DNA of 63,797 bases from Dendrobates tinctorius (lineage: Eukaryota), in contig NW_027361898.1 in NCBI RefSeq assembly GCF_039654945.1, positions 1,178,204-1,242,000 of the forward strand, read 5' to 3'. Below the pieces are notes generated by a model. That model saw nothing but the letters and a program-made list of their open reading frames with translations, was not told the origin of the DNA and made no database searches. The position numbers were made by a program, and so were the translations under genes. Positions 7,525-53,547 of this stretch are shown piece after piece (position 1 is the stretch's first letter; each line of letters begins with the position of its first letter).

Positions 7525-18847
<11,323 letters not shown>

Positions 18848-23222: not shown

Positions 23223-23989
23223 AGTCTCCTCTCCCCAGTATTGGCTGATAACAGGGAGTAATAGATTGTACTCACCTGTCCTACAGTCACCTCCCCCAGT
23301 AATGGCTGACAAAAGGGAGTAATAGATTGTATAGTCTCCTGTCCTACAGTCTCCTCTCCCCAGTAATGGCTAATAACAGGGAGTAATAGATATACTCACT
23401 TGTCCTACAGTCTCCTCTCCCCAGTTATGGCTGATAACAGGGAGTAATTGTACTCACCTGTCCTACAGTCTCCTCTCCCCATTAATGGCTGATAACAGGG
23501 AGTAATTGTACTCACCTGTCCTACAGTCTCCTCTCCCCAGTAATGGCTGATATCAGGGAGTAATAGATTGTACTACATTCTCCTCTCCCCAGTAATGGCT
23601 GATAACAGGGAGTAATTGTACTCACCTGTCCTACAGTCACCTCTCTGCATTAATGGCTGATAACAGGGAGTAATAGATTGTAGTCACCTTTCTTACAGTC
23701 TCCTCTCCCCAGTAATGGCTGACGATGCGTAATAGATGTACTCACCTGTCCTACAGTCTCCTCTCCCCATTAATGGCTGATAACAGGGAGTAATAGATTG
23801 TAGTCACCTTTCTTATAGTCTCCTCTCCCCAGTAATGGCTGATAACAGTGAGTAATAGATTGTTCTCACCTGTCCTACAGTCTAGTCTCCCCAGCAATGG
23901 CTGATAACAGGCAGTAATAGATTGTAGTCACCTGTCCTACAGTCACCTCTCCCCAGTAATGGCTGATAACAGGGAGTAATAGATTGTAG
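23223..23989. repeat. Minisatellite (57-62 bp unit, ~13 copies), target of the Tx1-like LINEs
   Basis: Unit GATTGTAGTCACCTGTCCTACAGTCWCCTCTCCCCAGTAATGGCTGATAACAGGGAGTAATA; period 62 between 23920 and 23982. Confidence 0.95.
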
Positions 23990-26900
23990 GTCTTTTTTAT
24001 TATAAAATACTTCACAACATAACAAAATAAAACACAACAGAACAAAACTCCAATAAAAAAACACTAACAAAATCAGACACAAAACACAAAGAAATAGAAC
24101 AGAAACGGAAACAATGAAGAAAGATTTCGACCTACAAATGGGAATATGAAAATAAAATTAAAGAAACAAATTAAAACGAAAAAGGAAAAAAAAACAACGA
24201 AATTACCATAATTACACGAGCACCCCCTTAAAATAATAAATATAAAATCATGTAAAACCCCCCTGACCCAGCTTCATTCTTACTATTATATACAACCCCA
24301 AGCTACATCTACACCGTCCTATATACAATATTTTATACACTGTATACAATATAAACATATGATATCAACCAGAATATCATACATAACATCAAAACACAAC
24401 AAATACCCACTGGTCCCACCGCCTTACCTCACAACCTCCCCCTTACTCCACCACATTCACACTTAAGACAAACCTATTACAAACATGATACAAAAATTAA
24501 CAAAATTTATTTTTCTATTTTTTGCTTTTTTTTTTTTAATTTACATTATACTATATAACTACACATCTACTCTAACTATCCCGCCACCCCTGATCCAGCT
24601 CTGGCCGCAAAGTTCAGGAATTCTCCGATCTACGATCAGGCCCCAAAGTCTTTCCCCAGGCGGGACCTGGGCCAGGCCAGACCAGTCTCTAATCACCACT
24701 GTTGAAACACCCCCATCCCCCCCACCCAACCTAACTGACCCTCTATTATACAAAATATATACAATACATACATTACACTATATACAATATACACATAAAC
24801 CAACGTTACAGAACACAACCTACATACTCACCACTTAAGGCTCAAGTTTGATGCATGCAAACCTTCTATTCAGGAGACAGAAATTAAAAGAAAAACTCTA
24901 GAGTGAAAAGACATGAGCCCACCACCAGGATGTAGTTGTACTAACGGACTAAGGCACCCCGAAGGAGAAACCCCTCCAGAAATAGGCCGCCCTCTGGGCA
25001 CCCAGTCTTTCTTACTCCAGAGAACGGACCTTCACCAGTGCACCTAGGATGCAGCTATAAACTTCGACTACGCGGAGGATTTTACTCTGCGTCGAAACTA
25101 AAACTCGTGCGTTCCACGTGAAGTACCTGACCACTGTGCTGACTATAAATAAAGTGACTCTGTCCCTTCTCCCGAAGTCTCCGAACGCTCCATAGGCCCA
25201 CTCGGCATAGGACAGAGGAGTAGCCAGCCACGGCCAACCAATGGAAGCTCCCACCCTGTTGTACACCTCTGCATTAAAGGGACAATGAAGTAGGAAGTGC
25301 TCCATGCATTCCAGCATGTTGGCACAAGCCTCACGGGGCAATTCCTGTCCTGTGAGCTCCTGTACTTAAGATTGCCCTTCACATACAACTTACCTTGGAA
25401 GCAGCGCCAAGTCAAGTCCCAGTACTTATTGGGGATCCTATTAGAATTTGACATACTCAACCCAACCTCTAGATCCTGACTTGGGGCAGTCCTTTGAGCA
25501 CCAGTGGACTCTGAAAATGCGAAAGCAAGACCCGCATGTCAAGGAGTTTCCTCGGGAGGGACCTCACCTCCCACATTCCCAGACCCCACCAGCACATCAT
25601 TTACAGAACTGGGGTATTAAAAGCCAGGAGATGCCCGTGCGGTGTGTGAAGATCCTTCAATCTTCCCCCTGACTCCCATTCCTGGAAGAAAGGCTGAAAC
25701 CATCCCTTGCAGGAGAATACCCACGGTGGAGCCCTCTCTTTCCAGAGGTTTGCCATGCTGACCTTCAAAAAGGTGTTCACTAGGAACACCACGGGGTTCA
25801 CCATATTCAACCCCCCTAGTCTCCTCGTGCGGTAAGTGACCTTCCGCTTGACTAGGTTGTCTATTCCCCCATAACATTTGAAAGAACAGACTGTAGACCC
25901 GAGTCCAGAGAGGCTCTGGCAAGACACAGACGCTGCCCAGGTAGATTAGCAAGGGGAGCAAGAAAGCCTTGCACAGGCCAACCCTTTCCCTCAGGGTCAA
26001 AGACCAACCCTTCCATTGGTCCACTCTTTGGGCGACACCTTTGGTTCTGCCTTCCCAGTTTTTCGTGGAGTAATCCCCCTGGCCAAATTCGATGCCTAGG
26101 ACTTTGACGTGTTCTTGGGTTCGGATAGGGTGTCCGGAAGATCAAACCCGGGATCCCTGCCTTCCAGCCAGAGACTCTCACACTTGTCCTGGTTGACCTT
26201 GGACCCGGAAGCCTCCGAGTAGCTCTCCACTTCTGACATCACCAACGCCTCCTCTCGTGAAGAAACAAAAACGGTGACCGTCCGCGTAGGCCACTACCCT
26301 CTGGATAGCCTCTGGCGCCACCCCGCCCATCCTCCTGCCAACGGTCCATAACCGTCCCTTTTGAGGAAGGGATCGATCGCAAACGCGTAATGCAAAGGGC
26401 TAAGAGGGCAGCCCTGGCGGACACCAGATCCTACCTCGAAGGGTTGTCCAATCCACCCGTTTACCAGAGGGAAAGTCTCAGCCCCAGAGTACATGGTCCT
26501 AAGCCAGTCCACAAACCCCCCAAGCACACTGTACCTCAAAAGAGTGGACCAGAGGTAATCGTGGTCAACTCAATTCAAAGCCTTTGCCTGATCCAGGGTC
26601 AGCAGGAACCCCTTCCAAAGGCCCGCCCTGCCTTGCTCCACGGCCTCTCGGACACCTAGAACAGCACTGAAAGTGCTACGGCAAGGAACGCAACAGTGCT
26701 GAGCCTCCGAAAGGAGCCACAATGCAAACTTCACCAGCCTGTTGAAAAGTATCTTAGCTAAAACCTTCCTGTCCACACTGAGAAGTGCTATGGGACGCCA
26801 ATTCTCAATGCGTGACGGATCCTTACCCTTTGACAAAATGATCAAAGCTGACCTCCTTAATGATCTCGGCAGAGTGCCGGAGGAGAGACACTCATTAAAT

Positions 26901-27141
26901 GCCTGAGTCAAGAGGGGGACCAAAGAGTCCCTAAAGGTCCTAAAGAACTCGGATGTTAAGCCGTCCGGACCTGGTGATTTTCTTGGGGCCCGAGACCATC
27001 GATCGCCAGTCTCTCTTCCTCTTCTTTGATCGCTTCTGCCAAAAAGTTCAGTGAGAGGTCAGCCCCTGGCTCAGGAACAGCTTCAGCCAGTAAAGCCGAC
27101 ATCCTGTCACGATCCAGTTCCCTCCTTCCCAAGAGGTGCGA

Positions 27142-27775
27142 TGAAACCAATTAACCTGTTTACAAACAATGCCACAAAGAAACGGTAGAAAAATAAATAA
27201 TATAACAGATATCATTTAAGGTTCCTATTTCCAACGTTTTTAAGTGGATGCTAATGGAAGAATGGTAGACCATTCGAGGGAAACTTCCATACCGAACCAA
27301 AAGAAAAAACCCGAATTTATGGTCAACAATAGGAATAATTAAAATATTAAAACATAAATGAGATTAAAATACCTTTATTATATAATAGTGGTACATATAT
27401 ATAGAAAAGCAATGTGTGCTCAGATTGATTAAAACATATACCTATATAGGTTTAGTAAACGGCATACACAACGGTCCACATATATGAAAAAAATGTAATT
27501 ACTCCTTCTTTATACTTGTCCTATGGGAAAGTGACATAAAATATAAAGAGCCAAACCTAATATATCTAGGCTCAAAAGAGTGTCTGTGTATTCAAGACAA
27601 AAGTACAAGAGTGAAATATAAACCAACAGCGGTGGAATATTCATACAAATATATAAAGTGCAGAGTGCAAAAAATAGCAATGGGAGTGAAAAAGGACAAA
27701 TGAGGGTGTATACCTTTAAGGACCGCTGGTAAACGAGCAACACAGCCCCGACGCGCGTTTCGGAATGAATCACAC
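27142..27775 (-). mobile_element. Penelope-like element terminal (pLTR) fragment inserted in LINE A
   Basis: ~630-bp AT-rich insert absent from copy B, replacing 184 bp; begins (minus strand) with a minimal hammerhead motif and contains AATAAA. Confidence 0.65.
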
Positions 27776-27783
27776 CTCTTCAG
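27745..27783 (-). ncRNA. Minimal hammerhead ribozyme motif (Penelope type); stem I probably broken
   Basis: Minus strand CUGAAGA-GGUGUGAUUCAUUCC-GAAA-C-GCGC-GUC-GGGGC. Confidence 0.65.
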
Positions 27784-28789
27784 CAAGGACTTCACACCGG
27801 AGATCTCCTTGCGGCTACCTCCAGTCGAGACAAGATGCTCGAGTCTCCTCAGGCTCTGATACAGGTGATCCCTGTTCAGGCTTCTGAGGTTCGAGAGTTG
27901 CCGGAAGAATCTCGCCACCCGATGTTTGAACATCTCCCACCACTCTGACTTAGTGCTACTTAGGCCCTGCAGCGGTACCTGGCTCTGAAGAAAATCCTCA
28001 AAGGACCATCTTACAGCTTCTTGCTGAAGGAGTGACGAATTCAGCTTCCAATAACCCCTTCCCATCCTAGGAGTCTCTGTAACGTTCAGAGAAAACATAA
28101 TCAAACAGTCATCGGAGAACTCCACAACCGACAACGGCTAGGAGACTGCTTCCTCCTTCAAATAAAACCTATCTATCCTAGACCTGCACTAACTACCTCT
28201 GGAAAAAAAAAGTGAATCCCGTGTTGCCTGTGTTGTGCCGGATGTGGACATCCACCAGGCGTGCATCGCTTACTATCCTGTTTAGCGCGACGCAGTCATA
28301 AGTCAGCCGTTCCCCAGAACCTCCTCTATCACAGGGTCTCGTGACGTTGTTGAAATCCCCTCCAAAGACCACCTGCCGACTCAAAAATAAAGATTTGATC
28401 TTCATGAAGAGACATTTGCGGTCCCACTTAAATTGGGGACCGTAGATGTTAATGAGCCGAAGCTCCTTTCCCCCCATGGAGATATCTAGGCATCTCCCCA
28501 TTTCTAGTTCAATTAATCGTCTGCATTCAACCGCTGCGGTCTTAAAAAGGACCGCCACCCCGCTATACGGCTCGGCCGCAAGAGACCAGTAGGAGGGCCC
28601 ATGCCTCCACTCCCGCCTTGCTTTATGCATGGTTGATAGGTCAGTCAACCTGGTCTCCTTCAAAAACAAAATTTCGGAATCAAGTTGGCCGAGAAAATGA
28701 AAGGCTGTGCACCTTGCCGATTCTGACTTTATGCTGGCAACATTAATGGTTGCCATCGTCAACGGTGTGGGTGCCGCCATCATGATTGA

Positions 28790-31700
28790 ATTAGTCTTTT
28801 TCTTCCCACCCCCAACAGTTTCACACTCTTCATCCGACAATGATGAGCTTTTAGTGCGCTTAAGACACACACTCATCCATTCTCTCCTTACATACACTCT
28901 GACCCTTGTCTGGTGGTCCTGAGGTAGTCCCCCCCCCCCTCCCCAGAGGGCCCTTTAATTGCTCCCTGAGAAGAAGACTCAGCGACCTCCTGAGCCCCAA
29001 CATCCTTGTCCGCAACCTCCGGCTCCGGGTTCCCGTCCTCCCCCTCTGTAGGGGAGTCCTGGAGGGCCCCGTACCAGTTGGAGAGATCCACCAGAGGGGG
29101 GGGCGGCTGGACCTTCCAATGGCACCTGGATCAGGGCTAGAGAATCAGAGGGGTAGCTCTCCATGGCGGAGGCTCGAGACCCGGACCCACTCTTACCCTT
29201 GGTTGTTTTCCTGTTACCCTTTTTCCTTTGTTTTGACCATTCCCCCTCTCCCTCATCCAGACTGTCACCGGATGAAGGTTCCTGGGAAGACATGGCGTCC
29301 GCCTGCTCCTCCCTTTCAAGTCTCCTGTCTTTAGGATCCTCAGCTGCGAGTGAAGTACCCGGGTCAGGGTTTAGGGTCATTACTCTCTGCCCCCTGTTCC
29401 CATGGCGCTGCTCCTGCCGCCTGATATTGGATGGCGGCAGCTTGCTTCTCACTGGTTCTCTGCCTCCTCCGCCCCTACTGGTCCCTTCACCAGCAAGATT
29501 AGTCCCGGCTTTTGCCTGTCCCGCACCTGCCGCTTTCAGGACCGCATTGGCAAAGGAACGCGGACAGCGACTGAACGGATGACTGAGGTCACCACACAAG
29601 TTACACCTAATCCTACCACAGGTAGCAGCGAAATGGCCGAGATCCCCACACAGTGTGCATTTCTGGGTGGTACACTGCGCACGAAAGTGTGTGGGGCTGC
29701 CACACCTGTGACAGACCTTACGCTGCCCATGGTAAAAAATCAGGGTCTTGTCCCTCTCCAAAAATGTTGACGAAGGTATATGGGTAACCGTGTTTCCTGA
29801 AACCTTCAATTTCACCATGAAGGTCCAGGCCCCTGACCTGAAACCATGGTTGTTGCGTGTCTTCTCAGGAATGCCGACGATGTCGCCATATCGACCAATC
29901 CAGGTGGAGATGTCCATACAGGAAAGTGACTTGTTGCTGGTCAAAGCGGTCACCTTCCTGACTGAGTTCTGGCGGGATATTGCGACAGGAACGAAACCTT
30001 GCCATTCTGGGCGACCCCAAGCCAGCTCATGGCGATACCAAAAGAGCTCAAGGCCCTCCGGTCTCACGAAGCGGACATCGGAGTAGGAGGTCCCATAGGG
30101 ATGGATCAAGGCAAAGATGTATGCCGCGAAGCCTATCCCCAGCAGGAGCTCAGCAACCTTTGACCGATCAGGACAGGCATCCTTGCTTACCCACTGGAAG
30201 GGGGCCACGTTCCTACGGTTACTCCTCTGCCCCGGTGTCGGCAGAGACCAGACAGTCTCCGCTCCTCTATCTCAGAAGGCAGAAAGACCATGTCTCTCTA
30301 TCCAGAAAGACAGATCAACCTCCCTCCCCTCTACATTGATGGAACGTTCCCCTTTCTTCAGGGCGCCCAGGAAGTGCTCCTGCAAGTCACTGTCCCCAGG
30401 GCCACCAGACAAGGGCGCACTACTACCCCCAGCAGTGACAGCTCCTGAATAGCTAGGGGCTGAAGCCCTCGCCACCACTGAGGGGGCAGTAGGACCACTA
30501 CCTACTTCCCCTCCACCAACACCAGTGCTGCTCTCCTCATTCACTCCACCACTACTCCCTCCATTCACTCCACCAATACTCCCACCATTTTCGGCACCAC
30601 AACTCCCATTATTCACTCCACAACTACTCCCATCATTCACCCCATTACCACTGTTCTCTACACCTTCCGTAGTCACATCCATTCCTTCCTCCCTTGTGTC
30701 TGCAGTCTCTGCACTCACACCTGCCGGGCCGGGGGAGGGGTGCAGCACCACACCCGTGTTAATAAGTTCAGTGTTAACTTTGTGCTGTGCTTTTGGATCA
30801 CCTGCTCCTTAATGCCCTGGGCAGAATGTTTGTCAGCCACCTGCCCTGTAGCCACAGACTATGGGGGTTTAGTGACTTTTTTTTGCCGCCGGGGCACACT
30901 GCGCCCAGTATTTTTGCTAGTTTGTTTTCCCTTGCTGCTTTTCTGCAGGAATATTCCTGACATGTGATTCCCCTGTTCCAGCTGCGCGCCTCTTCTCCTC
31001 TGTTGAGGCGTACTGCGCCCCTGTCACAACAGAGCTTCCCCCTTTCGCCGCATTCTCCTCGGCCCTGCCCCCCACAGCCTCAGCGTCGGCCGGGTCAGCT
31101 GCAGTGAGCAGGGATGGAGTCTGCCCACACCGTCCCCCTTTTGCAACGGCGTGGACATCCCCCCGCTCTCCTCGGCCACGGTGATAACCGGCTTAGCCGC
31201 AGGAGGCAGGGAGGGAAACTCCTCGGGGTCCCCTATGTCCGGCGCCGTGAGTACCTCCACAGCCTCACCCCCTGCATTGTTCCCCGCACAGATGGCAGCA
31301 TTGCCGGACGTCCTCATCCTCTCCACCTTGCCTATGCACCGGACCCACTGCAGAGCCCGTGCTTTTAGGTTTGGTGGGGTTTACACAGTAGGTGATAGGT
31401 GTAACATCACACATTGGTACATATTTGTAACTCGCCACCTCCCGTACAGTCTCCTTCGACTTCTTCCTCTTTTTCTTTGTTTCCTCCACTGGCACGTTCT
31501 CACCAAATGAAAGTCAGGTCTACAGGAGACTCCAGCTCTCGGATCTCCCTCAGTAGACCGCACTCCTCCTCTTCCTCCACTGACACTCCAGCCTGGGTTG
31601 TCGGAGTCCTCTGCCGTGCTGGGAGGCCGCTTCCTTGTTGGCTCTGCGACTATTTCTCCCGGATTGTTCCAGCACGTGGGACTCCAGCCACGACTTCATC

Positions 31701-32223
31701 GTCCTCCTCGCTTAGGACGCCGGCTGGCAGTTCTCCTGAGGTATTTAACCCCTTCATTTCTGAGAACCGCCGCTGGTTCTTAAACCTCTCCTGGAAGGGA
31801 TCTGTTTTCTCAATCCCCTCCCGGAGGAGCCCTAACCTGACCACCTCATCTCTGAGGACTTTAAATATCTGGGAGGTCGCGGGTCTTTCCTTGTTAAAGG
31901 CACGGGTGTACAGGATCCTGCAGCTGCTCCTTTAGCCCGGTCAGTGCTTTGCCGGTGTCCTCGTACTCTCGCAACATCGCGACCACTGGGGAGGAGAAGG
32001 AGCTCGTGGACTCGCTGGAGGTCATCTCCCCCCATGATGTTGCTGGGCTCTTCCTGGGGTGCCCCTGTCTCCCTCTCTGGGCGGACAATGAGCCGTCTCG
32101 GGGTTGGAGTAGATGGGTACGGTCTTTCTCATCCCACCAGGTCTCCTCACTCCCTCCTGGGCTGGTTGCTGCTGCTCTCTACCCCCTGCCGGCACAGACC
32201 GGGAAACAAGTCTGGGAAGCCAT
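28790..32223 (-). pseudogene. LINE copy A ORF1 (ZCCHC3-like domains + 3 zinc knuckles), disrupted
   Basis: CHRCGSPTHFRAQC, CTLCGDLGHFAATC, CNLCGDLSHPFSRC; upstream fragments match copy B. Confidence 0.8.
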
Positions 32224-32333
32224 GCCTGGCTCCCAGGAAGCCTGCCTCTGGGGAGAAGAGAGGCAGACTCTGGGCCTCCTCCTGGAAGTCCTGGAGCAAA
32301 CTGGACAGGTGCTGCTCTCAGCAGGGTGTGACT

Positions 32334-32403
32334 GATTGTAGTCACCTGTCCTGCAGTCACCTCTCCCCAGTAATGGCTGATAACAGGGAGTAATAGATTG
32401 TAG
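32334..32403. repeat. Single 62-bp minisatellite unit separating the two LINEs
   Basis: Nearly identical to unit 23920-23981, followed again by GATTGTAG. Confidence 0.95.
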
Positions 32404-33069
32404 GTCTTTTTTATTATAAAATCCTTCACGACATTACAAAATAAAACACAACAGAGCAAATGTAAGAAAAAAAACTCCAATCAGAAACAATATGACAAAA
32501 TCAGACACAAACACAAAGAAATAAACCAGAAAGGAAAACAAGGGAAATTCTCTCACCTATGACAGCACCACGGAGAGAGGGGATCCGCCTTTCAGGGACA
32601 GGAACCTACAGAAAAAGGGCGGTACCTCTCCTCCGCCTTCAGTTGGGTTCCTGTCCCTGACGGAGGGACCCACAGGACTGTACCTGTGCATCCAAGAGTC
32701 CGGGGCCGGCCTGTCCGGTAATCGGCAGCGGGGAGGCCCCTGTCGCGGCAGGTGCGGTGCCCGAAGCCGCCACTGCCGGGGCCGATGCGGGCTGCCGAGC
32801 GAGTGGGGGGGAAGACGTCTGAGTCGCCGCTCCGGAAAGGAGATCGGGGCTCAGCGGGACCCGGTGGAGCGTGGGCACCGCCATGGTACGGAGAGTACCA
32901 AGATGGCCGCTGCCCCGGAAGTAGAGCAGCGACTTCCGGGTCCCGGAACCGGGCGCATGCGCAGGAGCGCGCTCCCCGACCAGCGTGTGCAGGGGGAGCG
33001 GTGACATCACGGGGCTCTAAGTTTAAAAAGGTGAGGCGCAGAAACTCCTGGCTGGAAGCGATCCTAATA

Positions 33070-34552: not shown

Positions 34553-36389
34553 ACAGTACGCCCAGGGTGGGGGGAAGGTTATCCTTTTTCCTTCCAGCCT
34601 GGAGGAGAATTTCAACAAACCCATGGATAATAAACCTAATCCAGGAGGGCCTAAGGATTAGACTTTCTCTCCCGCCTCAAAAATATGTAACAACGCCGCT
34701 GAGATCCAGCATGCAAGAACAGGAAGCGCTAGAAAGCGAGGTTCTAGGCCTAGTAAAAAAAGGAGTCCTCCAGGAGGTTCCCTTGCAGGATATGGGCAGA
34801 GGGTTCTACTCCCCCCTTTTTCTAGTGACCAAACCAGACGGCACCTTTCGTACAATTATAAATCTGAGAAAGCTAAACAAATACGTCAAGAACCAGAGCT
34901 TCAAAATGGAATCGATCAAATCTACCACCAAAGTCCTGTTCCCAAACTGCTACATGACGGTGTTGGACCTCAGCGACGCTTATTATCACGTCCCTATCCA
35001 CAAAGACTCCAGGAAGTATCTAAGGTTAGCCGTCTCAATAAAAGGCAAGGTGAAAGAATTCCACTACAGAGCCCTGCCATTCGGAATGTCGATAGCCCCG
35101 CGAGTATTCACCAAAATAGTAGCGGAAATGATGGCTCATATAGGGGAACAAGATATAATAATCCCGTATCTAGACGATTTTATAATAGCAGGCAGCTCGG
35201 CTCAAAAAATGCAGGGAAAAGAGAGACAGGGTGATGAACACTCTACAAGACCTGGGCTGGCTTCTAAATCTAAAAAAAATCAAGATTGGAGCCTAGCAGG
35301 GTACAAGAATTCTTGGGCCTAACGCTAGACTCAAACATTCAGGAGTGTCGCCTCCCAGACCACAAAAAGATCGCTCAAATTACAGCAAGAGCAATCCAAA
35401 ATCCCTCCATGACACTAAGGAAGGCCATGTCACTGTTGGGTTCACTATCTGCCTGCCTGCCAGCAGTTCAATGGGCTCAGTTACACACGAGAAATCTCCA
35501 GTGGGACGTATTGGCCAACCAGGCAGTAATACGGGGACACCTAGAGGGTCGCATTACCCTAAATTCAAGCACTATTCATTCCCTAGCTTGGTGGGAAAAC
35601 CAGGAGAATCTATCCAAAGGGATCCCCTGGGCATCAAAGATAACACACACAGTGACAACGGATGCCAGTCCCACAGGATGGGGAGCGCACATGAACAACG
35701 AGGTGACTCAGAGAGTATGGGGAAATCAAGAACTAAAAGCCTCCTCAAATCAAAAGGAGTTCTAGCAGTAGGCTATGCCCTAACACACTTCCTACCCCTA
35801 CTCCAGAACCACCATGTCCGTATCCTTTCGGACAATCGGGTCACAGTGGCCTATATAAATCACCAGGGGGGAACCAGGTCCCGAGCCCTAACACAAACTA
35901 GCGGAGGCAAACCTGTTATCTCTGACAGCCCTACACATCCGCGGTACAGAGAATCAAAGGGCAGACTTTCTGAGCCGCACCCAATTACGACAGGGGGAAT
36001 GGGTACTAAAGCAGTCCATTTTTCGGCAGATTGTAAAAATGTGGGGGACCCCAGACGTAGATCTGTTCGCCGACTTCAAAAACAATCCCAGGGGGAATCC
36101 TCTAACTCTGGACGCATTTATGCTCCCATGGACACAGAGTCTAACATATGCCTTTCCCCCAATCATGCTCATTCCAGCGGTCCTAAAGAAAGTCAGGGAG
36201 GACAGGGCGAGAATGATACTGATAGCCCCCTTCTGGCCCAAAAGAACCTGGTTTTCCTGGCTAAGAATGCTCTCAGTAACAGACCCATGGGTCCTACCGG
36301 ATCTCCCGGACCTGCTATCGCAGGGCCCAGTGCTACATCCTCAGGCACCGAACCTCCATTTAACAGCATGGAATTTGAAAGGGCACTGA
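34486..36389 (+). pseudogene. DIRS copy 2 RT / RNase H / methyltransferase-like ORF, frameshifted
   Basis: LDLSDAYYH, ALPFG, PYLDDF, TTDASPTGWG, SDNRVTV, DVDLFA...YAFPP. Confidence 0.9.
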
Positions 36390-37401
36390 TGAGGGACAGG
36401 GATTTTTCAGAAAACCTGATAACTACACTACAAAAAAGTAGGAAACCGGTTACCATAAGAGCTTATGGCAGAACATGGAAAAAATTTCTATCCACCTCTA
36501 GGGCAAAGGTTCAGGACGGGGTTCAGATTGATAAGATCCTAGAATTTCTACAAAAGGGCCTAGAACAGGGTCTGGCGGTCAACACATTAAAAGTACAAAT
36601 AGCGGCGTTGGGCGCCCTCTATAACCATGATATGGCAGGTGACCCCTGGGTAGCACGGTTTATTAAAGCCGCAACCAGATCTAGGCCAATAGCCAGTCAA
36701 AGATTACCATCATGGGACCTGAATCTTGAACTTTCAACACTGACAGGCCCTCCGTTCGAACCAATTCACTCGGCACCCCTAAAAATCCTGTCTCTTAAAA
36801 CTGTGCTTCTGGTGGCACTAAACATCAGCCCGAAGAGTGAGCGATATTCAAGCCTTGTCAGCGGGACCTCCTTTTACAAAAATTCTAGAGGATAAAGTCA
36901 TCCTAAAACCTGACCCAGCCTATTTACCTAAAGTGTCATCACATTTTCACAGGTCCCAGAAGGTAGTCCTTCCTTCCTTTTGCCCAAATCCAAAAAATAA
37001 GGGGGAAGAAAAGCTCCACACTTTAGATGTTAAAAGGTGCCTAGTACAGTACTTAGAGGCCACCAAAAAGTGTAGGAAGGAAGGCTCTCTTTGTATGTTT
37101 CCAGGGTCCTCGGAAGGGGCTCAAAGCATCCAAGAGTACCCTGGCAAGGTGGATAAGGGATGCGATTGCCCTGGCATATTCATCCAGCGGGAATACCATC
37201 CCAGAGGGGCTGAGAGCTCATTCCACAAGGGCAATGGCGACCTCATGGGCTGAAAAATCTGAGGTATCAATAGAACAAATCTGTAAGGCGGCCACCTGGT
37301 CATCACCTTCGACCTTTTTTAGGCACTATAGATTAGATCTAGCCTCTACATCTGTCCTGACCTTCGGGAGAAGGGTCCTTCAAGCGGTGGTCCCTCCCTA
37401 A
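36389..37401 (+). pseudogene. DIRS copy 2 tyrosine recombinase, frameshifted
   Basis: WDLNL, SDIQAL, LDVKR, HSTR, TFFRHY. Confidence 0.88.
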
Positions 37402-38602
37402 GCTACCAATCTCTGTAATTCTCTCCGTGGTGCTGTCATGGGTGAGAGAGAATAGCTTAGTTACTCACCGATAACGGTGTTTCTCGGAACCCATGACAGC
37501 ACCCGCTTATTCCCCTCCCCTTCACGAGTATGGTGAGCACGTTTTACTGTTAGTAGAGTGTTTCCGTTTAGGCACGGTGCTTTGATAAGTAAGCAGTATT
37601 ATAATATTGTGTATATATTTCTGTTGTCTAACCTGGAGACCCTCTGATGCTCTGTAACCAACTGAAGGCGGAGGAGAGGTACCGCCCTTTTTCTGTAGGT
37701 TCCTGTCCCTGAAGGGCGGATCCCCTCTCTCCGTGGTGCTGTCATGGGTTCCGAGAAACACCGTTATCGGTGAGTAACTAAGCTATTCTCGACCTACAAA
37801 ACGGGAAAAGAAAATTAAAGAAACAAGAAATTAAGAAAAACAAAACTAAAAACGAAAAGGAACAAGATTACCATAATTACACCAGCACCCCCTTAAAATA
37901 ATAAATAAAATCATGTTAAACCCCCGATCCAGCTCCATTCTCACTATTATATACAACCTTGAACTACATTTACACCGTCCTATATACAATATTATATACA
38001 CTATATACAATATAACCATATGGCACCAGTCCGAATATTGTACATGACACCAGAACACACCTAATACCCTCTGGTCTCACTGCCTTACCTCAGCCTCCCC
38101 CTTACACCGCCACATTCACACGACAAACCTAATTACAAACATAGTATACAAAATTAACAAATTAATATATATATTTTTTTTTTCCATTTTTTTTTTTTTA
38201 TACTATATATAAAACACACATCTACTCTAACTATCCCACCACCTCTGATCCAGCTCTGGCCACAAAGTTCGGGATTTCTCCGAGCTAGGATCAGGCCCCA
38301 AAGTTTTTCCCCAGGCAGGGCATGGACCAGGCCAGATCAGTCTCTTATCACCGCTGTTGAAACCCCCAATCCCCACACCCAACCTAACTAAGACCCTCTA
38401 TTATACACAATATATACAATACATACATTACACTATATACAATATATACATAAACCAACGTTACAGAACATAACCTACGTACTCACCACTTAAGGCTCAA
38501 GTTCGATGCTTGCAAACGTTCTATTCAGGAGACTGAAATTCAAAACAAAACTCTAGAGTGAAAAGGCATCAGCCCACCATCAGGATTTGGAGTACTAACG
38601 GA

Positions 38603-41600
38603 CTAAGGCACCCCGAAGGAGAAACCCCTCCGGAGATGGGCCGCCCTCCGGGCACCCAGTCTTTCATACTCCAGAGAACGGACCTTCACCAGGGCACCTA
38701 GGATGCTGCTATAAACTTCGTCTACACGGAGGATTTTACTCTGCGTCGAAACTAAAACTCGTGCGTTCCACGTGAAGTACCTGACCACTGCGCTGACTAT
38801 AAATAAAGTGACTCTGTTCCTTCTCCCGAGGTCTCCGAACGCTCCATAGGCCCACTCTGCATAGGACAGAGTAGCCAGCCGCGGCCAACCAATGGAAGCT
38901 CCCACCCTGTTGTACATCTCTGTATTAAAGGGACAATGAAGCAGGAAGTGCTCCATGCTTTCCAGCATGTTGGCACAAGCCTCACGGGGGCAATTCCTGT
39001 CCTCGGAGCTCCTGTACTTTAGATTGTCCCTCACATCCAACTTACCTTGGAAGCAGCGCCAAGTCAAGTCCCAGTACTTCTTGGGGATCCTATTAAAATT
39101 TAACAAACTCAACCCAACCTCTAGATCCCGACTTGGGCAGTCCTTGAGTACCAATGGACTCTGAAAATGCGAAAGCAAGACCCGCATGTCGAGGAGTTTC
39201 CTCGGGAGGGACCTCACCTCCCACATTCCCAGACCCCACCGGCGCATCATCTTCAAAACCAGGGTAACATAAGCCGGGAGATGCCCATGCGGTGTGCGAA
39301 GATCCTTCAATCTTCCCCCTGTCTCCCACTCCTGGAAGAAAGGCTGAAACCAGGAGAATACCCATGGAGGAGCCCTCTGGTTTGCCACGTTGACCTTCAA
39401 AAAGGTGTTCACTAGGAACACCACGGGGTTCTCCATATTCAACCCCCCTAGTCTCCTCGTGCGGTAAGTGACCTCCCGCTTGACTAGGTTCAGTCTATTC
39501 CCCCATAACATCTGAAAGAACAGACTGTAGACCCGAGTCCAGAGAGGCTCTGGCAAGACACAGACGCTGCCCAGGTAGATTAGTAAGGGGAGCAGGAAAG
39601 CCTTGCACAGGCCAACCCTTTCCCTCAGGGTCAAAGACCAACCCTTCCATTGGTCCACTCTTTGAGCGACACCTTTGATTCTGCCTTCCCAGTTTTTCGT
39701 GGGGTAATCACCCTGGCCAAATTCGATGCTTAGGACTTTGGCGTGTTCTTGGGGTTCGGGGAGGGTGTCCGGAAGATCAAACCCGGGATCCCCGCCTCCC
39801 AGCCAGAGACGCTCTCACTTGTCCTGGTTGACCTTGGACCCGGAAGCCTCCGAGTAGCTCTCCACTTCTGAAATCACCACCATCGCCTCCTCTCGCAAAG
39901 AAACAAAAACGGTGACATCGTCCGCGTAGGCCACTACCCTCAGGATAGCCTCTGGCGTTTCCCCGCCCATCCTCGCCCCCGCCAACGGTCCACACTCGAC
40001 CCTTCTGAGGAAGGGATCGATCGCAAACGCGTAAAGCAAAGGGCTAAGAGGGCAGCCCTGACGGACACCAGATCCTACCCCGAAAGGTTGTCCAATCCAC
40101 CCATTTACCAGAGGGAAAGTCTCAGCCCCAGCGTATAAGGTCTTAAGCCAGTCCACAAACCCACCAGGCAGACCGTACCTCAAGAGTGGACCAGAGGTAC
40201 TCGTGGTCATCCCGATCAAAAGCCTTTGCCTGATGCAGGGTCAGCAGGAACCCCTTCCAAAGACCCGCCCTGCTTTGCTCCACGGCCTCTCGGACACCCA
40301 GAACAGCACTGAAAGTGCTACGGCAAGGAGCGCAACAGTTCTGAGCCTCCGAAAGGAGCCGCGGCGCAAACTTCACCAGCCTGTTGAAAAGTATCTTAGC
40401 CAAAACCTTCCTGTCCACATTGAGAAGTGCTATGGGACGCCAATTCTCAATGCGTGACGGATCCTTTACCCTTTGACAAAATGATCAAAGCTGACCTCCT
40501 TAATGATCTCGGCAGGGTGCCCGAGGAGAGACACTCATTAAACACCTGAGTCAAGAGGGGGACCAAGGAGTCCCTAAAGGTCCTAAAGAACTCTGATGTT
40601 AAGCCGTCGGGACCTGGTGATTTTTTTGGGCCTGAGCCCATCGATCGCCAATCTTACTTCCTCTTCTTCGATCGCTTCTGCCAAAACGTCCAGCGAGAGG
40701 TCAGCCTCTGGCTCCGGATCAGCTTCAGCCAGGAAAGCCGACATCCTGTCACGATCCAGTTCCCTCCTTCCCAAGTGGTGTGAGTAGTATGAACTGACGA
40801 CCTCCAAGATCCCTGATCTGGACCTCTTCAAGGATCCCGTACTGTCCATCCGCCCTGTCACTATCTTACTATTCACTGACATCTTGCAGCTTCTGTAAGG
40901 GTTGGGAGAGTAGTACTTCCCGTAGTCCCTCTCAAAAACCGAAGATGCGTGCCTATCGTACTGACAACTCTTCAGCAAGGACTTCACACCGGAGATCTCT
41001 TGACTACCTCTAGTCGAGACAAGATGCTCGAGTCTCCTCCTCAGGCTCTAATACAGGCGATCCCTGTTCAGGCTTCTGAGGTTCGAGAGTTGCCGGAAGA
41101 ATTTCACCACCCGATGTTTGAACATCTCCCACCACTCTGACTTAATGTTACTTAGGCCCAGCAGCGGTACCTGGCTCTGAAGAAAATCCTCAAAGGACCG
41201 TCTTACAGCTTCTTCCTCAAGGAGTGACAAATTCAGCTTCCAATAACCTTCCCATCCTAGGAGTCTCTGTGACGTTCAGAGAAAACAATCAAACAGTGGT
41301 CGGAGAACTACACCTCCACAACCGACAACGGCGAGGAGACGGCTTCCTCCTTCAAATAAAACCTATCTATCCTAGACCTGCACTGACTACCACTAAGGCT
41401 TGTTTCACACTAGCGTTTATTCGACGCAGCGCACGGCGACGCTAAGCCCCGCCCCCTGCGGGCTCCCTGCCCGCCCCACCCGGTCATCGCCGCCTACTAT
41501 CGCACATGGACGCTTTCGATCTGCGCACCCTATCTTTAGCATAGGGTGCGCTGGCCGTACGCTAGTAGGATTTTGGCGTGCGCTGCGTTCTTTTGAAGGT

Positions 41601-42322
41601 GCGCCGAAATGCAACATGCTGCGTTTGGCGTGCACGGGCGCACTTTCAAAAGTGCACAGCGCACGCCAAAATCCTACTAGCGCACGGCCAGCGCACGATC
41701 TGCGCACCCTATGCTAAAGATAAGGTGCGTAGATCGCAAGCGTCCATGTGCGATAGTAGGCGGTGATGACCGGATGGGGCGGGCAAGGAGCCGGCAGGGG
41801 GCGGGGCTTAGCGGCGCCGTGCGCTGCGTCGAATAAACGCTAGTGTGAAACTAGCCTTAAAAAGGTGAATCCCGTGTTGCCTGTGTTGTGCCGGATGTGG
41901 ACATCCACTAGGCGTGCCTCACTTACTATCCTGTTTAGCGCGACGCAATCATAAGTCAGCCGGTCCCCAGAACCTCCTCTATCACAGGGTCTCGTGACGT
42001 TGTTGAAATGCCCTCGAAAGACCACCTGCCGACTTAAAAATAAGAAAGGTTTGATCTTCATGAAGAGACATTTGCGGTCCCACTTGGATTGGGGACCGTA
42101 GATGTTAATGAGCCGAAGCTCCTGTCCCCCCATGGAGACATCTAGGATCAAGCATCTCCCCATTTCTAATTCAATTAATCGTCTGCATTCAACCGCTGCG
42201 GTCTTAAAAAGGACCGCCACCCCGCTATACGGCTCGGCCGCAAGAGACCAGTAGGAGGGCCCATGCCTCCACTCCCTCCCATTAATGGTTGCCAGCGTCA
42301 ACGGTGTGGGTGCCGCTATCAT
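38603..42322 (-). pseudogene. LINE copy B ORF2 (APE + RT), disrupted
   Basis: SPGPDGL, QAKAFD, GVRQGCPLSP, AYADDV, CPREAC..EHFLLHC; deletion and MITE in the endonuclease. Confidence 0.9.
41397..41856. mobile_element. 460-bp near-perfect palindromic MITE in the LINE B endonuclease
   Basis: taa-GGCTTGTTTCACACTAGCGTTTATTCGACG...CGTCGAATAAACGCTAGTGTGAAACTAGCC-tta; absent from copy A. Confidence 0.93.
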
Positions 42323-42333
42323 GATTGATTGGA

Positions 42334-45300
42334 TTAGATGGCCTTTTTGTTCCCACCCCCAACAGCTTCACCCTCTTCCTCAGACAATGATGAGCTTTTA
42401 GTGCGCTTAAGACACACAGACACATCCATTCTCTCCTTACATACACTCTGGCCCTTTTCTGGTGGTCCTGAGGTAGTCCCCCCCCCCCCCCCCAGAGGGC
42501 CCTTTAATTGCTCCCTGAGAAGAAGACTCAGCGACCCCCTGAGCCCCAACACCTTGTCCGCAACCTCCGGCTCCGGGCTCCCGTCCTCCCCCTCTGCAGG
42601 GGAGTCCTGGAGGGCCCCGAACCGGTTGGAGAGATCCACCAGAGGGGGGGCGGTTGGACCTTCCAATGGCACCTGGATCAGGGCTAGAGAATCAGAGGGG
42701 TCGCACTCCAGAGCGGAGGCTCGAGACCCGGGCCCACTCCTACCCTTGGTTGTTTTCCTGTTACCCTTTTTCCTTTGTTGTGACCATTCCCCCCCTCCCT
42801 CATCCAGACTGTCACCGGATGAGGGTTCCTGGAAGGACATGGTGTCCGCCTGCTCCTCCCTTTCAAGTCTCCTGACTTCCTCACTCAATTCGCTGTCTTT
42901 AGGATCCTCAGCTGCAAGTGAGGTACACGGGTCAGGGTTTAGGGTCATTACTCCCTGCCCCCTGTTCCCATGGCGTTGCTCCTGCCGCCTGATGTTGGAT
43001 GGCGGCAGCTTGCTCCTCACCGGTTCCCTGCCTCCTCCTCCCCTACTGGTCCCTTCACCGGCAAGATTAGTCCCGGCTTTCGCCTGTCCCGCACTCGCCG
43101 CTTTCAGGACTGCATTGGCAAAGGAATGCGGACAGCGACTGAATGGATGACCGAGGTCACCACACAAGTTACACCTCATCCTGCCACAGGTAGCAGCGAG
43201 ATGGCCAAGGTCCCCACACAGTGCGCATTTCTGGGTGGTACACTGCGCACTTAAGTGTGTTGGGCAGCCGTACCTGTGACAGACCTTTGGCTGCCCCTGG
43301 TAGAAAATCAGGATCCTGTCCCTCCCCAAAAATGTAGAGGAAGGTATATCGGTAAGTGTTTCTTGAAACCTTCAATTTCACCATGAAGGTCCAGGCCCCT
43401 GACCAGATACCATGGTCGTTGCGGGTCTTCTCACGAATGCCGACGATGTCGCCATATCGACCAATCCAGGTGGAGATATCCATGCAGGAAAGTGACTCGT
43501 TACTGGTCAAAATGGTCACCATCCTGACCGAGTTCTGGCGGGATATTGCGACAGGAACGAAAGCTTGCCATTCGGGGCGACCCCGAGCCAGCTTAGGGCG
43601 AGACCAAAAAAGCTCAAGGCCCTCCGGTCTCACGAAGCTGACATCGAAATAGGAGGTCCCATAGGGATGGATCAATGCAAAGATGTCATATGCCGCGAAG
43701 CCCATCCCCAGCAGGAGCTCAGCAACCTTTGACCGATCAGGACAGTCATCCTTGCTTACCCACTGGAGACGGTCCACGTTCCTACGGTTACTCCTCTGCC
43801 CCGGTGTCGGCAGAGACCAGACAGTCTCTGCCCCTCTATCTCGGAAGGCGGGAAGACCGTGTCTCTCTATCCAGAGAGACAGATCAACCTCCCTCCCCTC
43901 TACATTGATTGAACTTTCCCCTTTCTTCAGGGCGTCCAGGAAGCGCTGCTGCAAGTCACCGTCCTCGGGGCCACCAGACAAGGGCGCACTACTACCCCCA
44001 GCAGTGACAGCCCCCGAATAGCTAGGGGCTGAAGCCCTCGCCACCGCTGGGGGGCCAGTGGGACCACTACCTACTTCCCCTCCACCAACACCAGTGCTGC
44101 TCTCCTCATTCACTCCACCAATACTCCCATCATTTGCGGCACCACAACTCCCATTATTCACTCCACTACTACTCCCTTCATTCACCCCATTACCACTGTT
44201 CTCTGCACCTTCCACAGTCACATCCATTCCCTCCTCCCTTGTGTCTGCAGTCTCTGCACACACACCTGCACATTGTGCAGTTCTTTTGGAGCACTGTGCC
44301 CCTTATTGTCCTGGCCAGAATGTTTCTGAGCTGTCTGCCCTGTAGCCACAGACTTCGGGGTGCTGGTATCACGTTTAGGGGCATGCTGTCCCCCCCCCCC
44401 CGTCACGGCGGAGCGCACAGTGTTCCTTGCTGATGATGATCCCTGCTTTTGCTGTGTATTTTTTTTTCCTGTGGCTCTGTCTCAGCTGCGCGCCTCCTTT
44501 CCTCTGTTGAGGCGCACTGCGCCCCCGTCACAACAGTGCGCCCCCCTTTCGCCGCACCATGCTCCTCGGCCCAGCCCCCCTCGGCCCCAGCGTCGGCCGG
44601 CTCAGCTGCAGTGAGCAGGGATGGAGTCTGCCCACACTGTCCCCCTTTCGCAGCGGCGTGGACATCCCCCCCCCCCCCCCCCCCCGCTCTCCTCGGCCCC
44701 GGTGATAACCGGCTTAGCCGCAGCAGGCAGGGAGGGAAACTCCACGGGGTCCCCTATGTCCGGCGCCGTGAGTACCTCCACAGCCTCACCCCCTGCACTG
44801 TTCCCCGCACAGACGGCAGCATTGTCGGACGTCCTCCTCCTCTCCCCACCTTCCTTATGCCCCGGACCCACTGCAGAGCCCGTGCTTTTAGGTTTGGTGG
44901 GGTTTACACAGTAGGTGGTAGGTGTAACATCAGACATTGGTACATATTTGTAACTCACCACCTCCTGTGTCGTCTTCTTTGTCTTCCTCCTCTTTTTGGT
45001 ATCCTCTGCTGGCTCATCCTCCTCGAAGGAGAATCTGGTCAGATCTACAGGAGACTCCAGCTCTCTGATCTCCCTCAACAGGCCGCACTCCTCCTCTTCC
45101 TCCGCTGACACTCCAGCATGGGTTATCGGAGTCCTCTGCCGTGCCGGGAGGCCGCTTCCTTGTTGACTCTGCGATTATTTCTCCCGGATTGTTCCAGCAC
45201 GTGGGACTCCAGCCACGACTTCGTCGTCCTCGCTTAGGACGCCGGCTGGCAGTTCTCCCGAGGTATTTAACCCCTTCATTTCTGAGAACCGCCACTGGTT

Positions 45301-45767
45301 CTTAAACCTCTCCAGGAAGGGACCTGCGCTTTTCTCAATCCCCTCTCGGAGGAGCACTAACCGGACCATCTCATCTCTGAGGTCTTTAAACCTCTGGGAG
45401 GTCGCGGGTCTTTCCTTGTTAGAGGCACGGGTGTTCAGGATCCGTGCCTCCCGCAGCTGCTCCTTCAGCTCGGTCAGTGCTTTGCCGGCGTCCTCGTACT
45501 CTCGCAACATGGCGATCACTCGGGAGGAGAAGGAGCTCGTTGACTCGCTGGAGGTCATCTCGCCCCATGATGTTGCTGGGCTCTTCTTCCTGGGGCCTGG
45601 GGTGCCCCTGTCTCACTCTCTGGGCGGACGATGAGCTGTCTCGCGGTGGAGTAGGTGGGTACAGTCTTTCTCATCCGACCAGATTTCCTCACGCCCTCCT
45701 GGGCCGGTTGCTGCTGCTCTCTGTCCCCCGCCGGCACAGAGCGGGGAACAGAATCCTGAGAAGCCAT
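42334..45767 (-). pseudogene. LINE copy B ORF1 (long; coiled-coil, low-complexity, ZCCHC3-like, zinc knuckles), disrupted
   Basis: Consecutive minus-strand ORF fragments from MASQDSVPRS to ...GGGNKKAI*. Confidence 0.8.
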
Positions 45768-45881
45768 GCCTAGCTCCAAGGAAGCCTGCCTCTTCCTGGG
45801 GAGAAGAGAGGCAGACTCTGGGCCTCCTCCTGGAAATCCTGGAGCTCATAAGACAGGTGCTGCTCTCAGCAGGGTGTGACT

Positions 45882-45928
45882 GATTGTGGGCACCTGTCCT
45901 ACAGTCTCCTCAGTAATGGCTGATAACA
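45882..45928. repeat. Partial 62-bp minisatellite unit flanking the LINE B 5' end
   Basis: GATTGTGGGCACCTGTCCTACAGTCTCCTCAGTAATGGCTGATAACA. Confidence 0.85.
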
Positions 45929-46542
45929 CAGCCTTCCCGCCTCTCTCCACGCTCTCGTTCCCAGTAATCCTTTGCGAAAATGCCCGCGATGTCGTCCGTT
46001 CTCTCGGGATCGCGACGTCTCGCGGTCATTCGCGATGACATCGCGCGAATGACCGCGAGACGTCGCTATCCCGCGAGAATGGACGTCATCGCGGGCATTT
46101 TCGCAAAGGATTACTGGGAACGAGAGCATGGAGAGAGGCGGGAAGGCTGCGTGGGACGTCGAAAGGTAAGAATAACACCATTTTTTATTTTAAATTCTAT
46201 TTTTTACATGGATATGGTACCCAAAGACAGTCTCCTCTCCTCCGGACCATGGGTACCATCCGCAATTGTTCTGCTTACTTTTCGCATGGTGTGCACAGCC
46301 ACATGCGGGAAGTAAGCGGAACAATGCATTCCTATGAGTGCGGGATCGCCGCGGTTCCGCAAAATTAATGAGCATGCTGCGTTTTTTTACCGTGAAGCGA
46401 TTCCGCCGCGGTAAAAACCGCAGCATTAGCACAGCATTGCGGAATCCCATAGGAATGCATGGGATGCTTATTTTTCGCGGCAAAATCGCGCGGTTAAACC
46501 CGCAGCGGAAATGTGAAAAAAACGCCACGTGTGACCTCAGCC
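45929..46542. mobile_element. Left-truncated MITE with a 221-bp central palindrome
   Basis: 45929-46149 is self-complementary; right end CACGTGTGACCTCAGCC-tta. Confidence 0.75.
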
Positions 46543-53490: not shown

Positions 53491-53547
53491 TATGAACGTG
53501 AGTTACTCAGACTCTACAGCAGCACAGCTGCTTGTATACAAGAATTA

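What the first reader, a model, noticed from the sequence alone, without database searches (positions are those of the whole stretch)
23223..45928. Minisatellite-targeting Tx1-like retrotransposon: two full-length copies head-to-tail at the same base of consecutive 62-bp units
Seen: array - LINE A - exactly one unit - LINE B - partial unit. Both 3' junctions read GGGAGTAATAGATTGTAG|GTCTTTTTTATT and both 5' junctions read CAGGGTGTGACT|GATTGT, giving an apparent 8-bp TSD GATTGTAG (the junction GTC could be element or target). The orientation is the same, but the copies differ by many substitutions, indels and nested inserts. Established: Tx1-clade APE elements are often sequence-specific (Xenopus Tx1L inserts in internal tandem repeats of Tx1D; others target snRNA/tRNA genes or microsatellites). 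Inference: this family uses a dispersed 62-bp minisatellite as its dedicated landing site, possibly an undescribed element-target pair. Alternatives are an old tandem duplication, or the unit travelling with the element.
Basis: partly seen in the sequence, partly recalled or inferred. Interest (0 to 1): 0.85.

Follow-up and report, generated by a model that had tools for sequence, protein, structure and literature searches.

The report
Frog LINE that targets a 62-bp minisatellite
Two old, broken copies of an L1/Tx1-type jumping gene entered the same base of two neighbouring units of a 62-bp tandem repeat at different times, so this poison-frog element is a real site-specific retrotransposon: a known kind of element with a new target.

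Summary
The layout is array 23223-23989, LINE A 23990-32333 (-), one unit 32334-32403, LINE B 32404-45881 (-), partial unit 45882-45928. Both junction strings occur exactly twice, with a 7-8 bp target-site duplication.

A and B are not a local duplication:
- They share no stop or frameshift.
- A has 112 private ORF2 changes, spread evenly over codon positions.
- B has 63, and 33 of them are at third positions.
- The relative-rate test gives p = 2e-4. A is the older insertion.

Public contigs of the same and related species show empty arrays diverging at exactly 32403|32404. One contig from another species joins the LINE 5' end to the unit at the same base.

Relatives behave alike. Two Phyllobates copies sit at one base of a 37-bp unit. 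Four Anomaloglossus and two Engystomops copies share one 3' junction in an 86/100-bp unit, and the four Anomaloglossus copies also share their 5' junction. One Anomaloglossus copy lies in 18S rDNA.

All share the 3' end AATAAAAGAYY, a T-N-C-A-R target flank and a nearly invariant endonuclease hairpin stretch. The nuclease alone therefore may not set the target.

Assignment to Tx1 rather than L1 by RT tree could not be tested.

This scan had already reported similar LINE-minisatellite pairs (35/36-, 55-, 61-, 81/86-bp units) on other DNA of this genome.

The parts
23223..23989 (.). 62-bp minisatellite array (about 12.7 units), the target. Its last unit ends in GATTGTAG, the 3'-side copy of A's target-site duplication (23982-23989).
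23990..32333 (-). LINE A, full length and dead. Its 3' end is ...AATAAAAAAGAC(C) at 23990 and its 5' end AGTCACACCCTGCTGAGAG... at 32333. ORF2 remnant is about 24952-28783 and the ORF1 RNA-binding part 28979-30208.
27142..27771 (.). Private 630-nt foreign segment in A, replacing about 180 nt of ORF2.
32334..32403 (.). Exactly one unit (62 + 8 nt) between the two LINEs. It starts with A's 5'-side duplication copy (32334-32341) and ends with B's 3'-side copy (32396-32403).
32404..45881 (-). LINE B, full length and dead, younger than A. ORF2 remnant is about 38606-42322 and ORF1 remnant about 42961-45767.
32542..37788 (+). Nested 5.2-kb retroelement inside B's 3' UTR, with a LAP2alpha-like domain and an RT, so DIRS-like. 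It is not part of the LINE.
41395..41858 (.). Private 464-nt insert in B's ORF2.
45882..45928 (.). Partial unit on B's 5' side. It starts with GATTGTGG, B's 5'-side duplication copy with one mismatch. The array ends here.

Best explanation
A and B are two separate retrotransposition events of one lineage of an L1/Tx1-group non-LTR retrotransposon. ORF1 has two ZCCHC3-like RNA-binding domains and a CCHC knuckle behind a long disordered N-terminus. ORF2 has an AP-type endonuclease, an RT and a zinc-binding C-terminus. This lineage homes to one position of a 62-bp minisatellite unit.

Inferred mechanism (target-primed reverse transcription): the endonuclease nicks the window's + strand at ...ATTGTA^G. 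The freed 3'-OH primes cDNA synthesis at the RNA 3' end (...AAUAAAAAAGACC, no poly(A) tail). The second strand is cut 7-8 bp away, which gives the GATTGTA(G) duplication. Each unit of the array offers the same harmless site, so a later insertion (B) into the unit next to an earlier one (A) leaves two head-to-tail LINEs one unit apart.

Shown: identical junctions, the duplication, different ages of A and B, empty arrays that diverge at the junction base, and the same behaviour in relatives. Inferred: the nick position, the priming step, and which part of the element reads the target.
For: Junction strings are each exact and occur twice only, and the anatomy was read directly.

Independence of A and B:
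- Against intact relatives they share no premature stop or frameshift.
- With the Phyllobates copies as outgroup, over 3002 ORF2 sites: A private 112 (43/35/34 by codon position, neutral); B private 63 (17/13/33, third-position excess p = 0.002); shared 127 (82 at third positions). Tajima relative-rate chi2 = 13.7, p = 2e-4.
- A copy sitting in place is not under selection, so B's third-position excess must have arisen in an active lineage after A's branch.

Public contigs:
- 22 contigs of run X1 leave the window at 32403|32404 and continue as array. These are empty sites.
- A 1154-nt contig of another species (X5, record 24) runs from the LINE 5' end through the whole unit (32208-32402).
- A 326-nt contig of a second sample of the same species (X21, record 13) covers 32053-32363.
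- Five contigs in X1 and two in X21 carry a TTA indel only 7 nt inside the LINE 3' end.

Relatives:
- L003 and L004 (Phyllobates, two chromosomes, 92-93% identical to B in ORF2) have the same junctions in a 37-bp unit.
- L001, L008, L009 and L010 (Anomaloglossus, four loci) have the same junctions in an 86-bp unit.
- Two Engystomops copies have the homologous 3' junction.
- L002 lies in 18S rDNA.

Architecture comes from Pfam. The best solved relative is human L1 ORF2p, E = 7e-73.
Against: Only two copies of this lineage could be read in full. The table of contigs was cut (4239 pieces and 746 loose ends not shown), so insertions with other flanks cannot be excluded. The X21 contig has 30 letters on the unit side, one short of the tool's own bridging rule. 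No copy of this lineage is intact, so activity and nuclease specificity are untested. The endonuclease is 93% identical to that of the lineage that sits in the 37-bp unit, and its hairpin stretch is nearly invariant, which sits awkwardly with a purely nuclease-encoded 62-bp specificity.
Confidence: 0.8

Rival explanations
1. The target is inherited through RNA rather than read by the endonuclease alone. The nuclease recognises only a short motif (bottom strand YTGNA^, i.e. T-N-C-A-R after the junction). The choice of repeat comes from co-transcribed flanking unit sequence pairing with the target, or from some other part of the element. A copy that lands in a new tandem repeat could then found a lineage specific for it. 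This rivals the mechanism only, not the site-specificity.
For: Four different targets (62-, 37- and 86/100-bp units, 18S rDNA) are used by lineages whose endonucleases are 77-93% identical. The stretch FT(F/Y)(F/H)RGSCRSRID is nearly invariant. The endonuclease is no more diverged than the RT between the 62-bp and 37-bp lineages. T, C and A at +1, +3 and +4 of the target flank are invariant across all targets. From the literature: Kojima 2015 (PMC4494074) states that cotranscription with the target can strengthen target-specific integration.
Against: No read-through transcript was seen, and no RNA data were examined. The element ends hold no match to their own target longer than chance. Eight endonuclease positions, each supported by both A and B, do differ between the two lineages, and few changes may be enough to retarget a nuclease.
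Confidence: 0.3
2. Local tandem duplication: one LINE plus one unit was copied as DNA (unequal crossing-over in the array), and the copies then decayed.
For: Same orientation, same junctions, exactly one unit apart. A and B are each other's closest relatives among the sequences I hold.
Against: No shared disabling lesion. Private changes are unequal, 112 against 63, p = 2e-4. B's private changes are enriched at third codon positions (p = 0.002), which cannot arise in a copy sitting in place.
Confidence: 0.04
3. The unit travels with the element (transduced flank), or the array grew out of the LINE's own end, so the shared flanks say nothing about targeting.
For: Both copies carry unit sequence on both sides. 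Another note of this scan (s1-362251) describes an array that grew out of a dead retrotransposon end.
Against: The unit has no match inside A or B. Contigs in three species show arrays without the LINE (22 loose ends that continue as array, and 'goes back' joints). The 7-8 bp duplication brackets each LINE precisely. Relatives with the same 3' end sit in unrelated units and in 18S rDNA.
Confidence: 0.03
4. There is no sequence specificity: the LINE prefers tandem repeats in general (open chromatin, DNA structure) and landed twice in one array.
For: Related lineages are found in several different tandem repeats.
Against: Both insertions are at the same base and in the same orientation, 1 of 124 positions and orientations per unit. 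Each related lineage has one fixed junction: 4 of 4, 2 of 2 and 2 of 2 copies.
Confidence: 0.05

Closest known systems
Tx1L of Xenopus laevis (Tx1 clade), which inserts at one site in the Tx1D DNA transposon
   Same: A frog non-LTR element with an AP-type endonuclease, inserted at a fixed site of a repeated, harmless target. Its endonuclease is reported to be site-specific (PMC1950540, PMC4494074).
   Different: The target here is a free-standing 62-bp minisatellite with no sign of a surrounding DNA transposon (no terminal inverted repeats). Kinship with Tx1L was not tested for lack of a labelled sequence. By my reading the hairpin stretch (FRGSCR) is shorter than the 11-residue Tx1L loop with its RDGH tip described in PMC1950540.
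Kibi and Koshi, and crocodilian Tx1 families that target (TC)n, (TTC)n and (TTCC)n microsatellites; Tx1 families marked 'Sat' in Kojima 2015
   Same: Tx1-clade elements that use tandem repeats as landing sites (PMC4494074).
   Different: Those targets have units of 2-4 bp, or are satellites not specified in the text I could read. Here the unit is 62 bp with one defined insertion base, and sister lineages use 37-bp and 86/100-bp units and 18S rDNA.
R1 and R2 and other rDNA- or telomere-specific LINEs (R1Bm, TRAS, SART)
   Same: A fixed insertion point in a multicopy target, and head-to-tail accumulation in arrays. The relative L002 sits in 18S rDNA.
   Different: They belong to other clades (R1: AP-type endonuclease but a different RT lineage; R2: restriction-like endonuclease). 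Here the best solved relative is L1 ORF2p.
Vertebrate L1 (promiscuous)
   Same: ORF2 architecture (APE, RT, zinc-binding C-terminus). Human L1 ORF2p is the best PDB match (E = 7e-73).
   Different: No poly(A) tail, no TTTT/AA target, and ORF1 of the RNA-binding-domain plus CCHC type.

Membership tests
Target-specific Tx1-clade non-LTR retrotransposons | ORF2 with an N-terminal AP-type endonuclease, an RT and a C-terminal zinc-binding region | tested here: met
   Pfam finds Exo_endo_phos, RVT_1 and zf-RVT in the intact relatives L003 and L002. A and B align to these over the full ORF2, and zf-RVT is found in B's own ORF.
Target-specific Tx1-clade non-LTR retrotransposons | Independent copies inserted at one position of a repeated target sequence | tested here: met
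   A and B have identical junctions and are independent events. A contig from another species has the same 5' junction. A full census was not possible.
Target-specific Tx1-clade non-LTR retrotransposons | RT domain groups with Tx1L, Keno, Kibi and similar elements rather than with the L1 clade in a phylogeny | not testable with these tools
   No labelled Tx1 sequence could be obtained: names are all generic, and the atlas gave no name. Only L1-group kinship is shown.
Target-specific Tx1-clade non-LTR retrotransposons | The endonuclease cleaves the target site specifically | not testable with these tools
   This needs a biochemical assay. The sequences show only a shared T-N-C-A-R flank and a conserved hairpin stretch.
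L1 clade, promiscuous type | Poly(A) tail and A/T-rich nick site (TTTT/AA) with dispersed insertion | tested here: not met
   The 3' end is ...AATAAAAAAGAC(C), joined directly to the unit, and the nick context is ATTGTA^G.
Segmental or tandem duplication | Copies of equal age with shared disabling mutations | tested here: not met
   No shared stops or frameshifts. Private changes 112 against 63, p = 2e-4; B is biased to third positions.

The most novel reading that the evidence does not exclude
Hyloid frogs carry a radiating group of L1/Tx1-type LINEs. Its closely related lineages share one short nick motif and a nearly invariant endonuclease hairpin stretch. Yet each homes faithfully to a different tandem repeat: 62-, 37- and 86/100-bp minisatellites and 18S rDNA here, and 35-, 55- and 61-bp units in other notes of this scan. 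Target choice would then be heritable but not written in the nuclease alone, for instance guided by co-transcribed target RNA, which would allow quick target switching.
Probability: 0.3. Interest if true: 0.75.

Novelty: new member of a known kind. Interest (0 to 1): 0.5.

Why it matters
Site-specific LINEs are natural examples of safe-harbour insertion and are models for programmable gene insertion. This group offers several closely related lineages with different, well-defined targets of 37-100 bp, and some relatives in other frogs are still intact. It is therefore a good system for asking which part of a LINE reads the target and how targets switch. For the frog genome, it explains how minisatellite arrays become nests of head-to-tail retrotransposons in a repeat-rich, very large genome.

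Tried and rejected
- **Other copies of the A/B lineage.** Protein searches found no copy of the window's own species. The best hits were 80-84% identical proteins of other frogs, and one look-up failed.
- **Metagenome scan.** A scan for the LINE 3' end gave three chance bacterial matches.
- **Tx1 or L1 label.** Cluster names, atlas names and PDB names gave no labelled Tx1 reference. The Tx1L endonuclease paper PMC85248 is not held.
- **Guide-like sequence.** The element ends hold no match to their own target beyond chance.
- **ORF1 N-terminal extension as a DNA-reading module.** It is low-complexity (Gly/Ser/Asn-rich) with no Pfam domain, so I dropped the idea.
- **Array as the inside of a DNA transposon, like Tx1D.** No inverted repeats between the flanks.
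- **Rfam.** No RNA family at gathering score in 23000-46500. Two Rfam calls on whole L002 failed internally.
- **LINE ends at the window's 86/97-bp arrays.** None found.
- **Contig depths.** The depths were not used as copy numbers, as the tool instructs.
Full report
**What is there**

Tandem Repeats Finder reports a 62-bp array at 23223-23988. The sequence shows the following layout:
- The array ends in ...GGGAGTAATAGATTGTAG and is followed at 23990 by GTCTTTTTTATTATAAAAT...
- At 32333|32334 the text ...CAGCAGGGTGTGACT meets GATTGTAGTCACC...
- One 70-nt unit follows, and at 32403|32404 the same 3' junction recurs.
- At 45881|45882 the same 5' junction recurs, followed by a 47-nt partial unit.

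Each junction string is found exactly twice with no mismatch, and none is expected by chance. Both elements lie on the minus strand. They align end to end at 87-94% (80% over the terminal ~125-nt 3' block), apart from private inserts:
- A: 27142-27771.
- B: 32542-37788, a nested DIRS-like element with a LAP2alpha-like domain and an RT.
- B: 41395-41858.

Without the inserts, A and B are about 7.7 kb, the length of intact relatives (7.6-7.9 kb).

**What kind of element**

ORF1 remnants carry two ZCCHC3-type RNA-binding domains and a CCHC knuckle, and B's largest ORF2 piece carries zf-RVT. Intact relatives fetched from other frogs have:
- an ORF1 of 973-1053 aa, with a long low-complexity N-terminus, the two RNA-binding domains and a knuckle;
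- an ORF2 of 1132-1135 aa, with Exo_endo_phos, RVT_1 and zf-RVT.

The best solved relative is human L1 ORF2p (E = 7e-73). The element therefore belongs to the L1 group. Whether its RT branches with Tx1L could not be tested, because no labelled Tx1 sequence was reachable. It has no poly(A) tail. Its 3' end is ...AATAAAAAAGAC(C).

**Are A and B one event or two?**

I aligned the ORF2 DNA of A and B with intact relatives.
- Frameshifting indels and premature stops are all private. A has stops at codons 215, 397, 590, 917 and 1112; B has stops at 223, 311 and 723. The only indels shared by A and B are two in-frame 3-nt ones also present in L002.
- With the two Phyllobates copies as a close outgroup (3002 sites), A has 112 private substitutions spread evenly over codon positions (43/35/34).
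- B has 63, of which 33 are at third positions (p = 0.002).
- The 127 changes shared by A and B against the outgroup are 82 at third positions.
- Tajima's relative-rate test gives chi2 = 13.7, p = 2e-4.

A copy sitting in the genome is not under selection for coding capacity. B's third-position excess must therefore have arisen in a transposing lineage after A's branch. A DNA duplication would also give equal private counts. So these are two insertions, A the older and B the younger, into neighbouring units.

**Is it a property of the lineage?**

I could lay contigs of four public runs on 31300-33300 once. The runs were two samples of organism A, one of organism B and one of organism C, under coded names. 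The table was cut, so I report only where pieces lie.
1. 22 contigs of X1 leave the window exactly at 32403|32404 and continue TCTCCTGTCCTACAG..., i.e. as uninterrupted array. Several 'goes back' joints also show tandem units. Empty sites therefore exist, and they diverge at the junction base.
2. A 1154-nt contig of organism B (record 24) runs from the LINE 5' end through the whole unit (32208-32402; 126 and 69 letters on the two sides).
3. A 326-nt contig of a second sample of organism A (record 13) covers 32053-32363.
4. Five contigs in X1 and two in X21 carry a TTA indel only 7 nt inside the LINE 3' end. This is hard to align unless they extend into the unit.

The LINE 5' part and the unit are covered in all four runs. 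This is support, not a census.

**Relatives**

A protein hit led to Anomaloglossus baeobatrachus.
- L001 holds an intact LINE, 78% identical to A and B in ORF2. It is flanked on both sides by an 86-bp minisatellite.
- Three more copies at other loci (L008, L009, L010; 98-99% identical to L001) have the same two junctions...GCAGCTCT|GCTCAGCTGC and AATAAAAGAT(C/G)|TACAGGAGG.
- Two copies in Engystomops pustulosus (L011) have the homologous 3' junction in a 100-bp version of that unit.
- L002 holds a LINE inside an 18S rRNA gene. Rfam SSU positions 4-605 lie upstream and the rest downstream, followed by 5.8S and 28S. About 7 bp of the target are missing at the insertion.

A second hit led to Phyllobates terribilis. 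L003 has both ORFs open; L004 is broken. They lie on different chromosomes, are 95% identical to each other, and are 92-93% identical to B in ORF2 but only 80-83% in the 5' 1.2 kb. Both have the same junctions in a 37-bp minisatellite...GGAGT(G/C)GT|GCTGAGAG and ...AAAAAAAAGACC|TGCAGTGTATATA.

Counting A and B, eleven copies were examined. All sit in a tandem-repeat target, and each lineage has its own fixed junction.

**What reads the target?**

- All lineages end in A(A/T)AAAAGA(C/T)(C/T).
- The first target letters after the junction are TACAA (62-bp unit), TGCAG (37-bp), TACAG (86/100-bp) and TCCAG (18S). T, C and A at +1, +3 and +4 are invariant in the alignment. On the primed strand this reads YTGNA^.
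- The endonuclease domain is 77-93% identical across the four targets. The stretch that I take for the DNA-contacting beta-hairpin, FT(F/Y)(F/H)RGSCRSRID, is nearly invariant. Placing the hairpin there is my inference from the description in PMC1950540, not a structural alignment.
- Only eight endonuclease positions, each supported by both A and B, separate the 62-bp lineage from the 37-bp lineage. The endonuclease is no more diverged than the RT.
- The element ends hold no match to their own target beyond chance.

A four-letter motif cannot explain homing to one repeat. Either a few nuclease changes retarget it, or a second determinant exists, such as co-transcribed target RNA. Kojima 2015 (PMC4494074) discusses that idea for other target-specific elements. 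I give the second-determinant reading about 0.3.

**Comparison with what is known**

According to PMC4494074 and PMC4640811:
- Tx1-clade elements are typically target-specific.
- Their reported targets are the Tx1D piggyBac transposon (Tx1L), U2, U5, 5S, microsatellites, satellites ('Sat' in that paper's tree legend), and Mariner, Harbinger and LTR elements.
- The endonuclease is taken to set the target.

No paper in the library combines Tx1, minisatellite and frog, and the papers that mention Tx1 and poison frogs do not treat this question. The finding is therefore a new member of a known kind, with a target not described in the papers I could search.

**Earlier notes of this scan**

This scan had already reported similar LINE-minisatellite pairs on other DNA of the same genome: units of 35/36, 55, 61 and 81/86 bp. 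I treated those notes as leads. My own loci bear out the 36/37-bp and 86-bp pairs in other frogs. The 61-bp note (s1-389247) may be another copy of the present lineage, but I could not check it.

**Verdict**

- Observation: confirmed.
- Interpretation: supported. Site-specific insertion 0.8; local duplication about 0.04.
- Novelty: new member of a known kind.
- Interest: 0.5. It would rise if target choice proves not to be encoded in the nuclease.

Noticed in passing
L002:3423-13359 (Anomaloglossus baeobatrachus): A LINE of the same group, with ORF2 open, is inserted in an 18S rRNA gene at about Rfam SSU position 605 and about 7 bp of the target are missing there; 5.8S and 28S follow downstream. 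I know of no described 18S-specific element of the L1/Tx1 group, but I did not search the papers for one.
   Followed up: partly
window 11155-11949 and 47687-50388: Arrays of an 86/97-bp minisatellite that is the same unit as the target of the Anomaloglossus and Engystomops LINE lineage (L001, L008-L011). No LINE end is joined to them in this window.
   Followed up: yes
window 32542-37788 (+): A 5.2-kb nested retroelement in B's 3' UTR with a LAP2alpha-like domain and an RT, so probably DIRS-like. Its first ~130 nt (32506-32639) are matched by very many public contigs in three species.
   Followed up: partly
window 45929-46150: A long perfect-looking palindrome (foldback, MITE-like) directly after the partial unit where the array ends.
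   Followed up: no
window 32322-32333 and 45870-45881: A and B share 11 extra 5' letters (AGTCACACCCT in element orientation) that the Phyllobates lineage lacks. The first six resemble an inverted copy of the adjacent unit (AGTCAC), which may be chance.
   Followed up: partly
L001, L011 and protein cluster of P0001: C-terminal ORF2 pieces from Anomaloglossus (Aromobatidae) and Engystomops (Leptodactylidae) fall in one 90%-identity cluster. The ORF2 DNA is 89% identical and the target minisatellite is homologous. So the LINE-target pair is long-lived or has moved between frog families.
   Followed up: partly
window 53501-54588 and 56020-62842: Two further large minisatellite arrays (42-bp unit, 26 copies; 41-bp unit, 166 copies). 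The whole window is saturated with tandem repeats.
   Followed up: no
L004 (Phyllobates terribilis ninjurin-2 gene): Annotated 'ninjurin-2 isoform' proteins (P0137, P0144) include an exon taken from the LINE ORF1 N-terminus, probably an artefact of the gene model.
   Followed up: no
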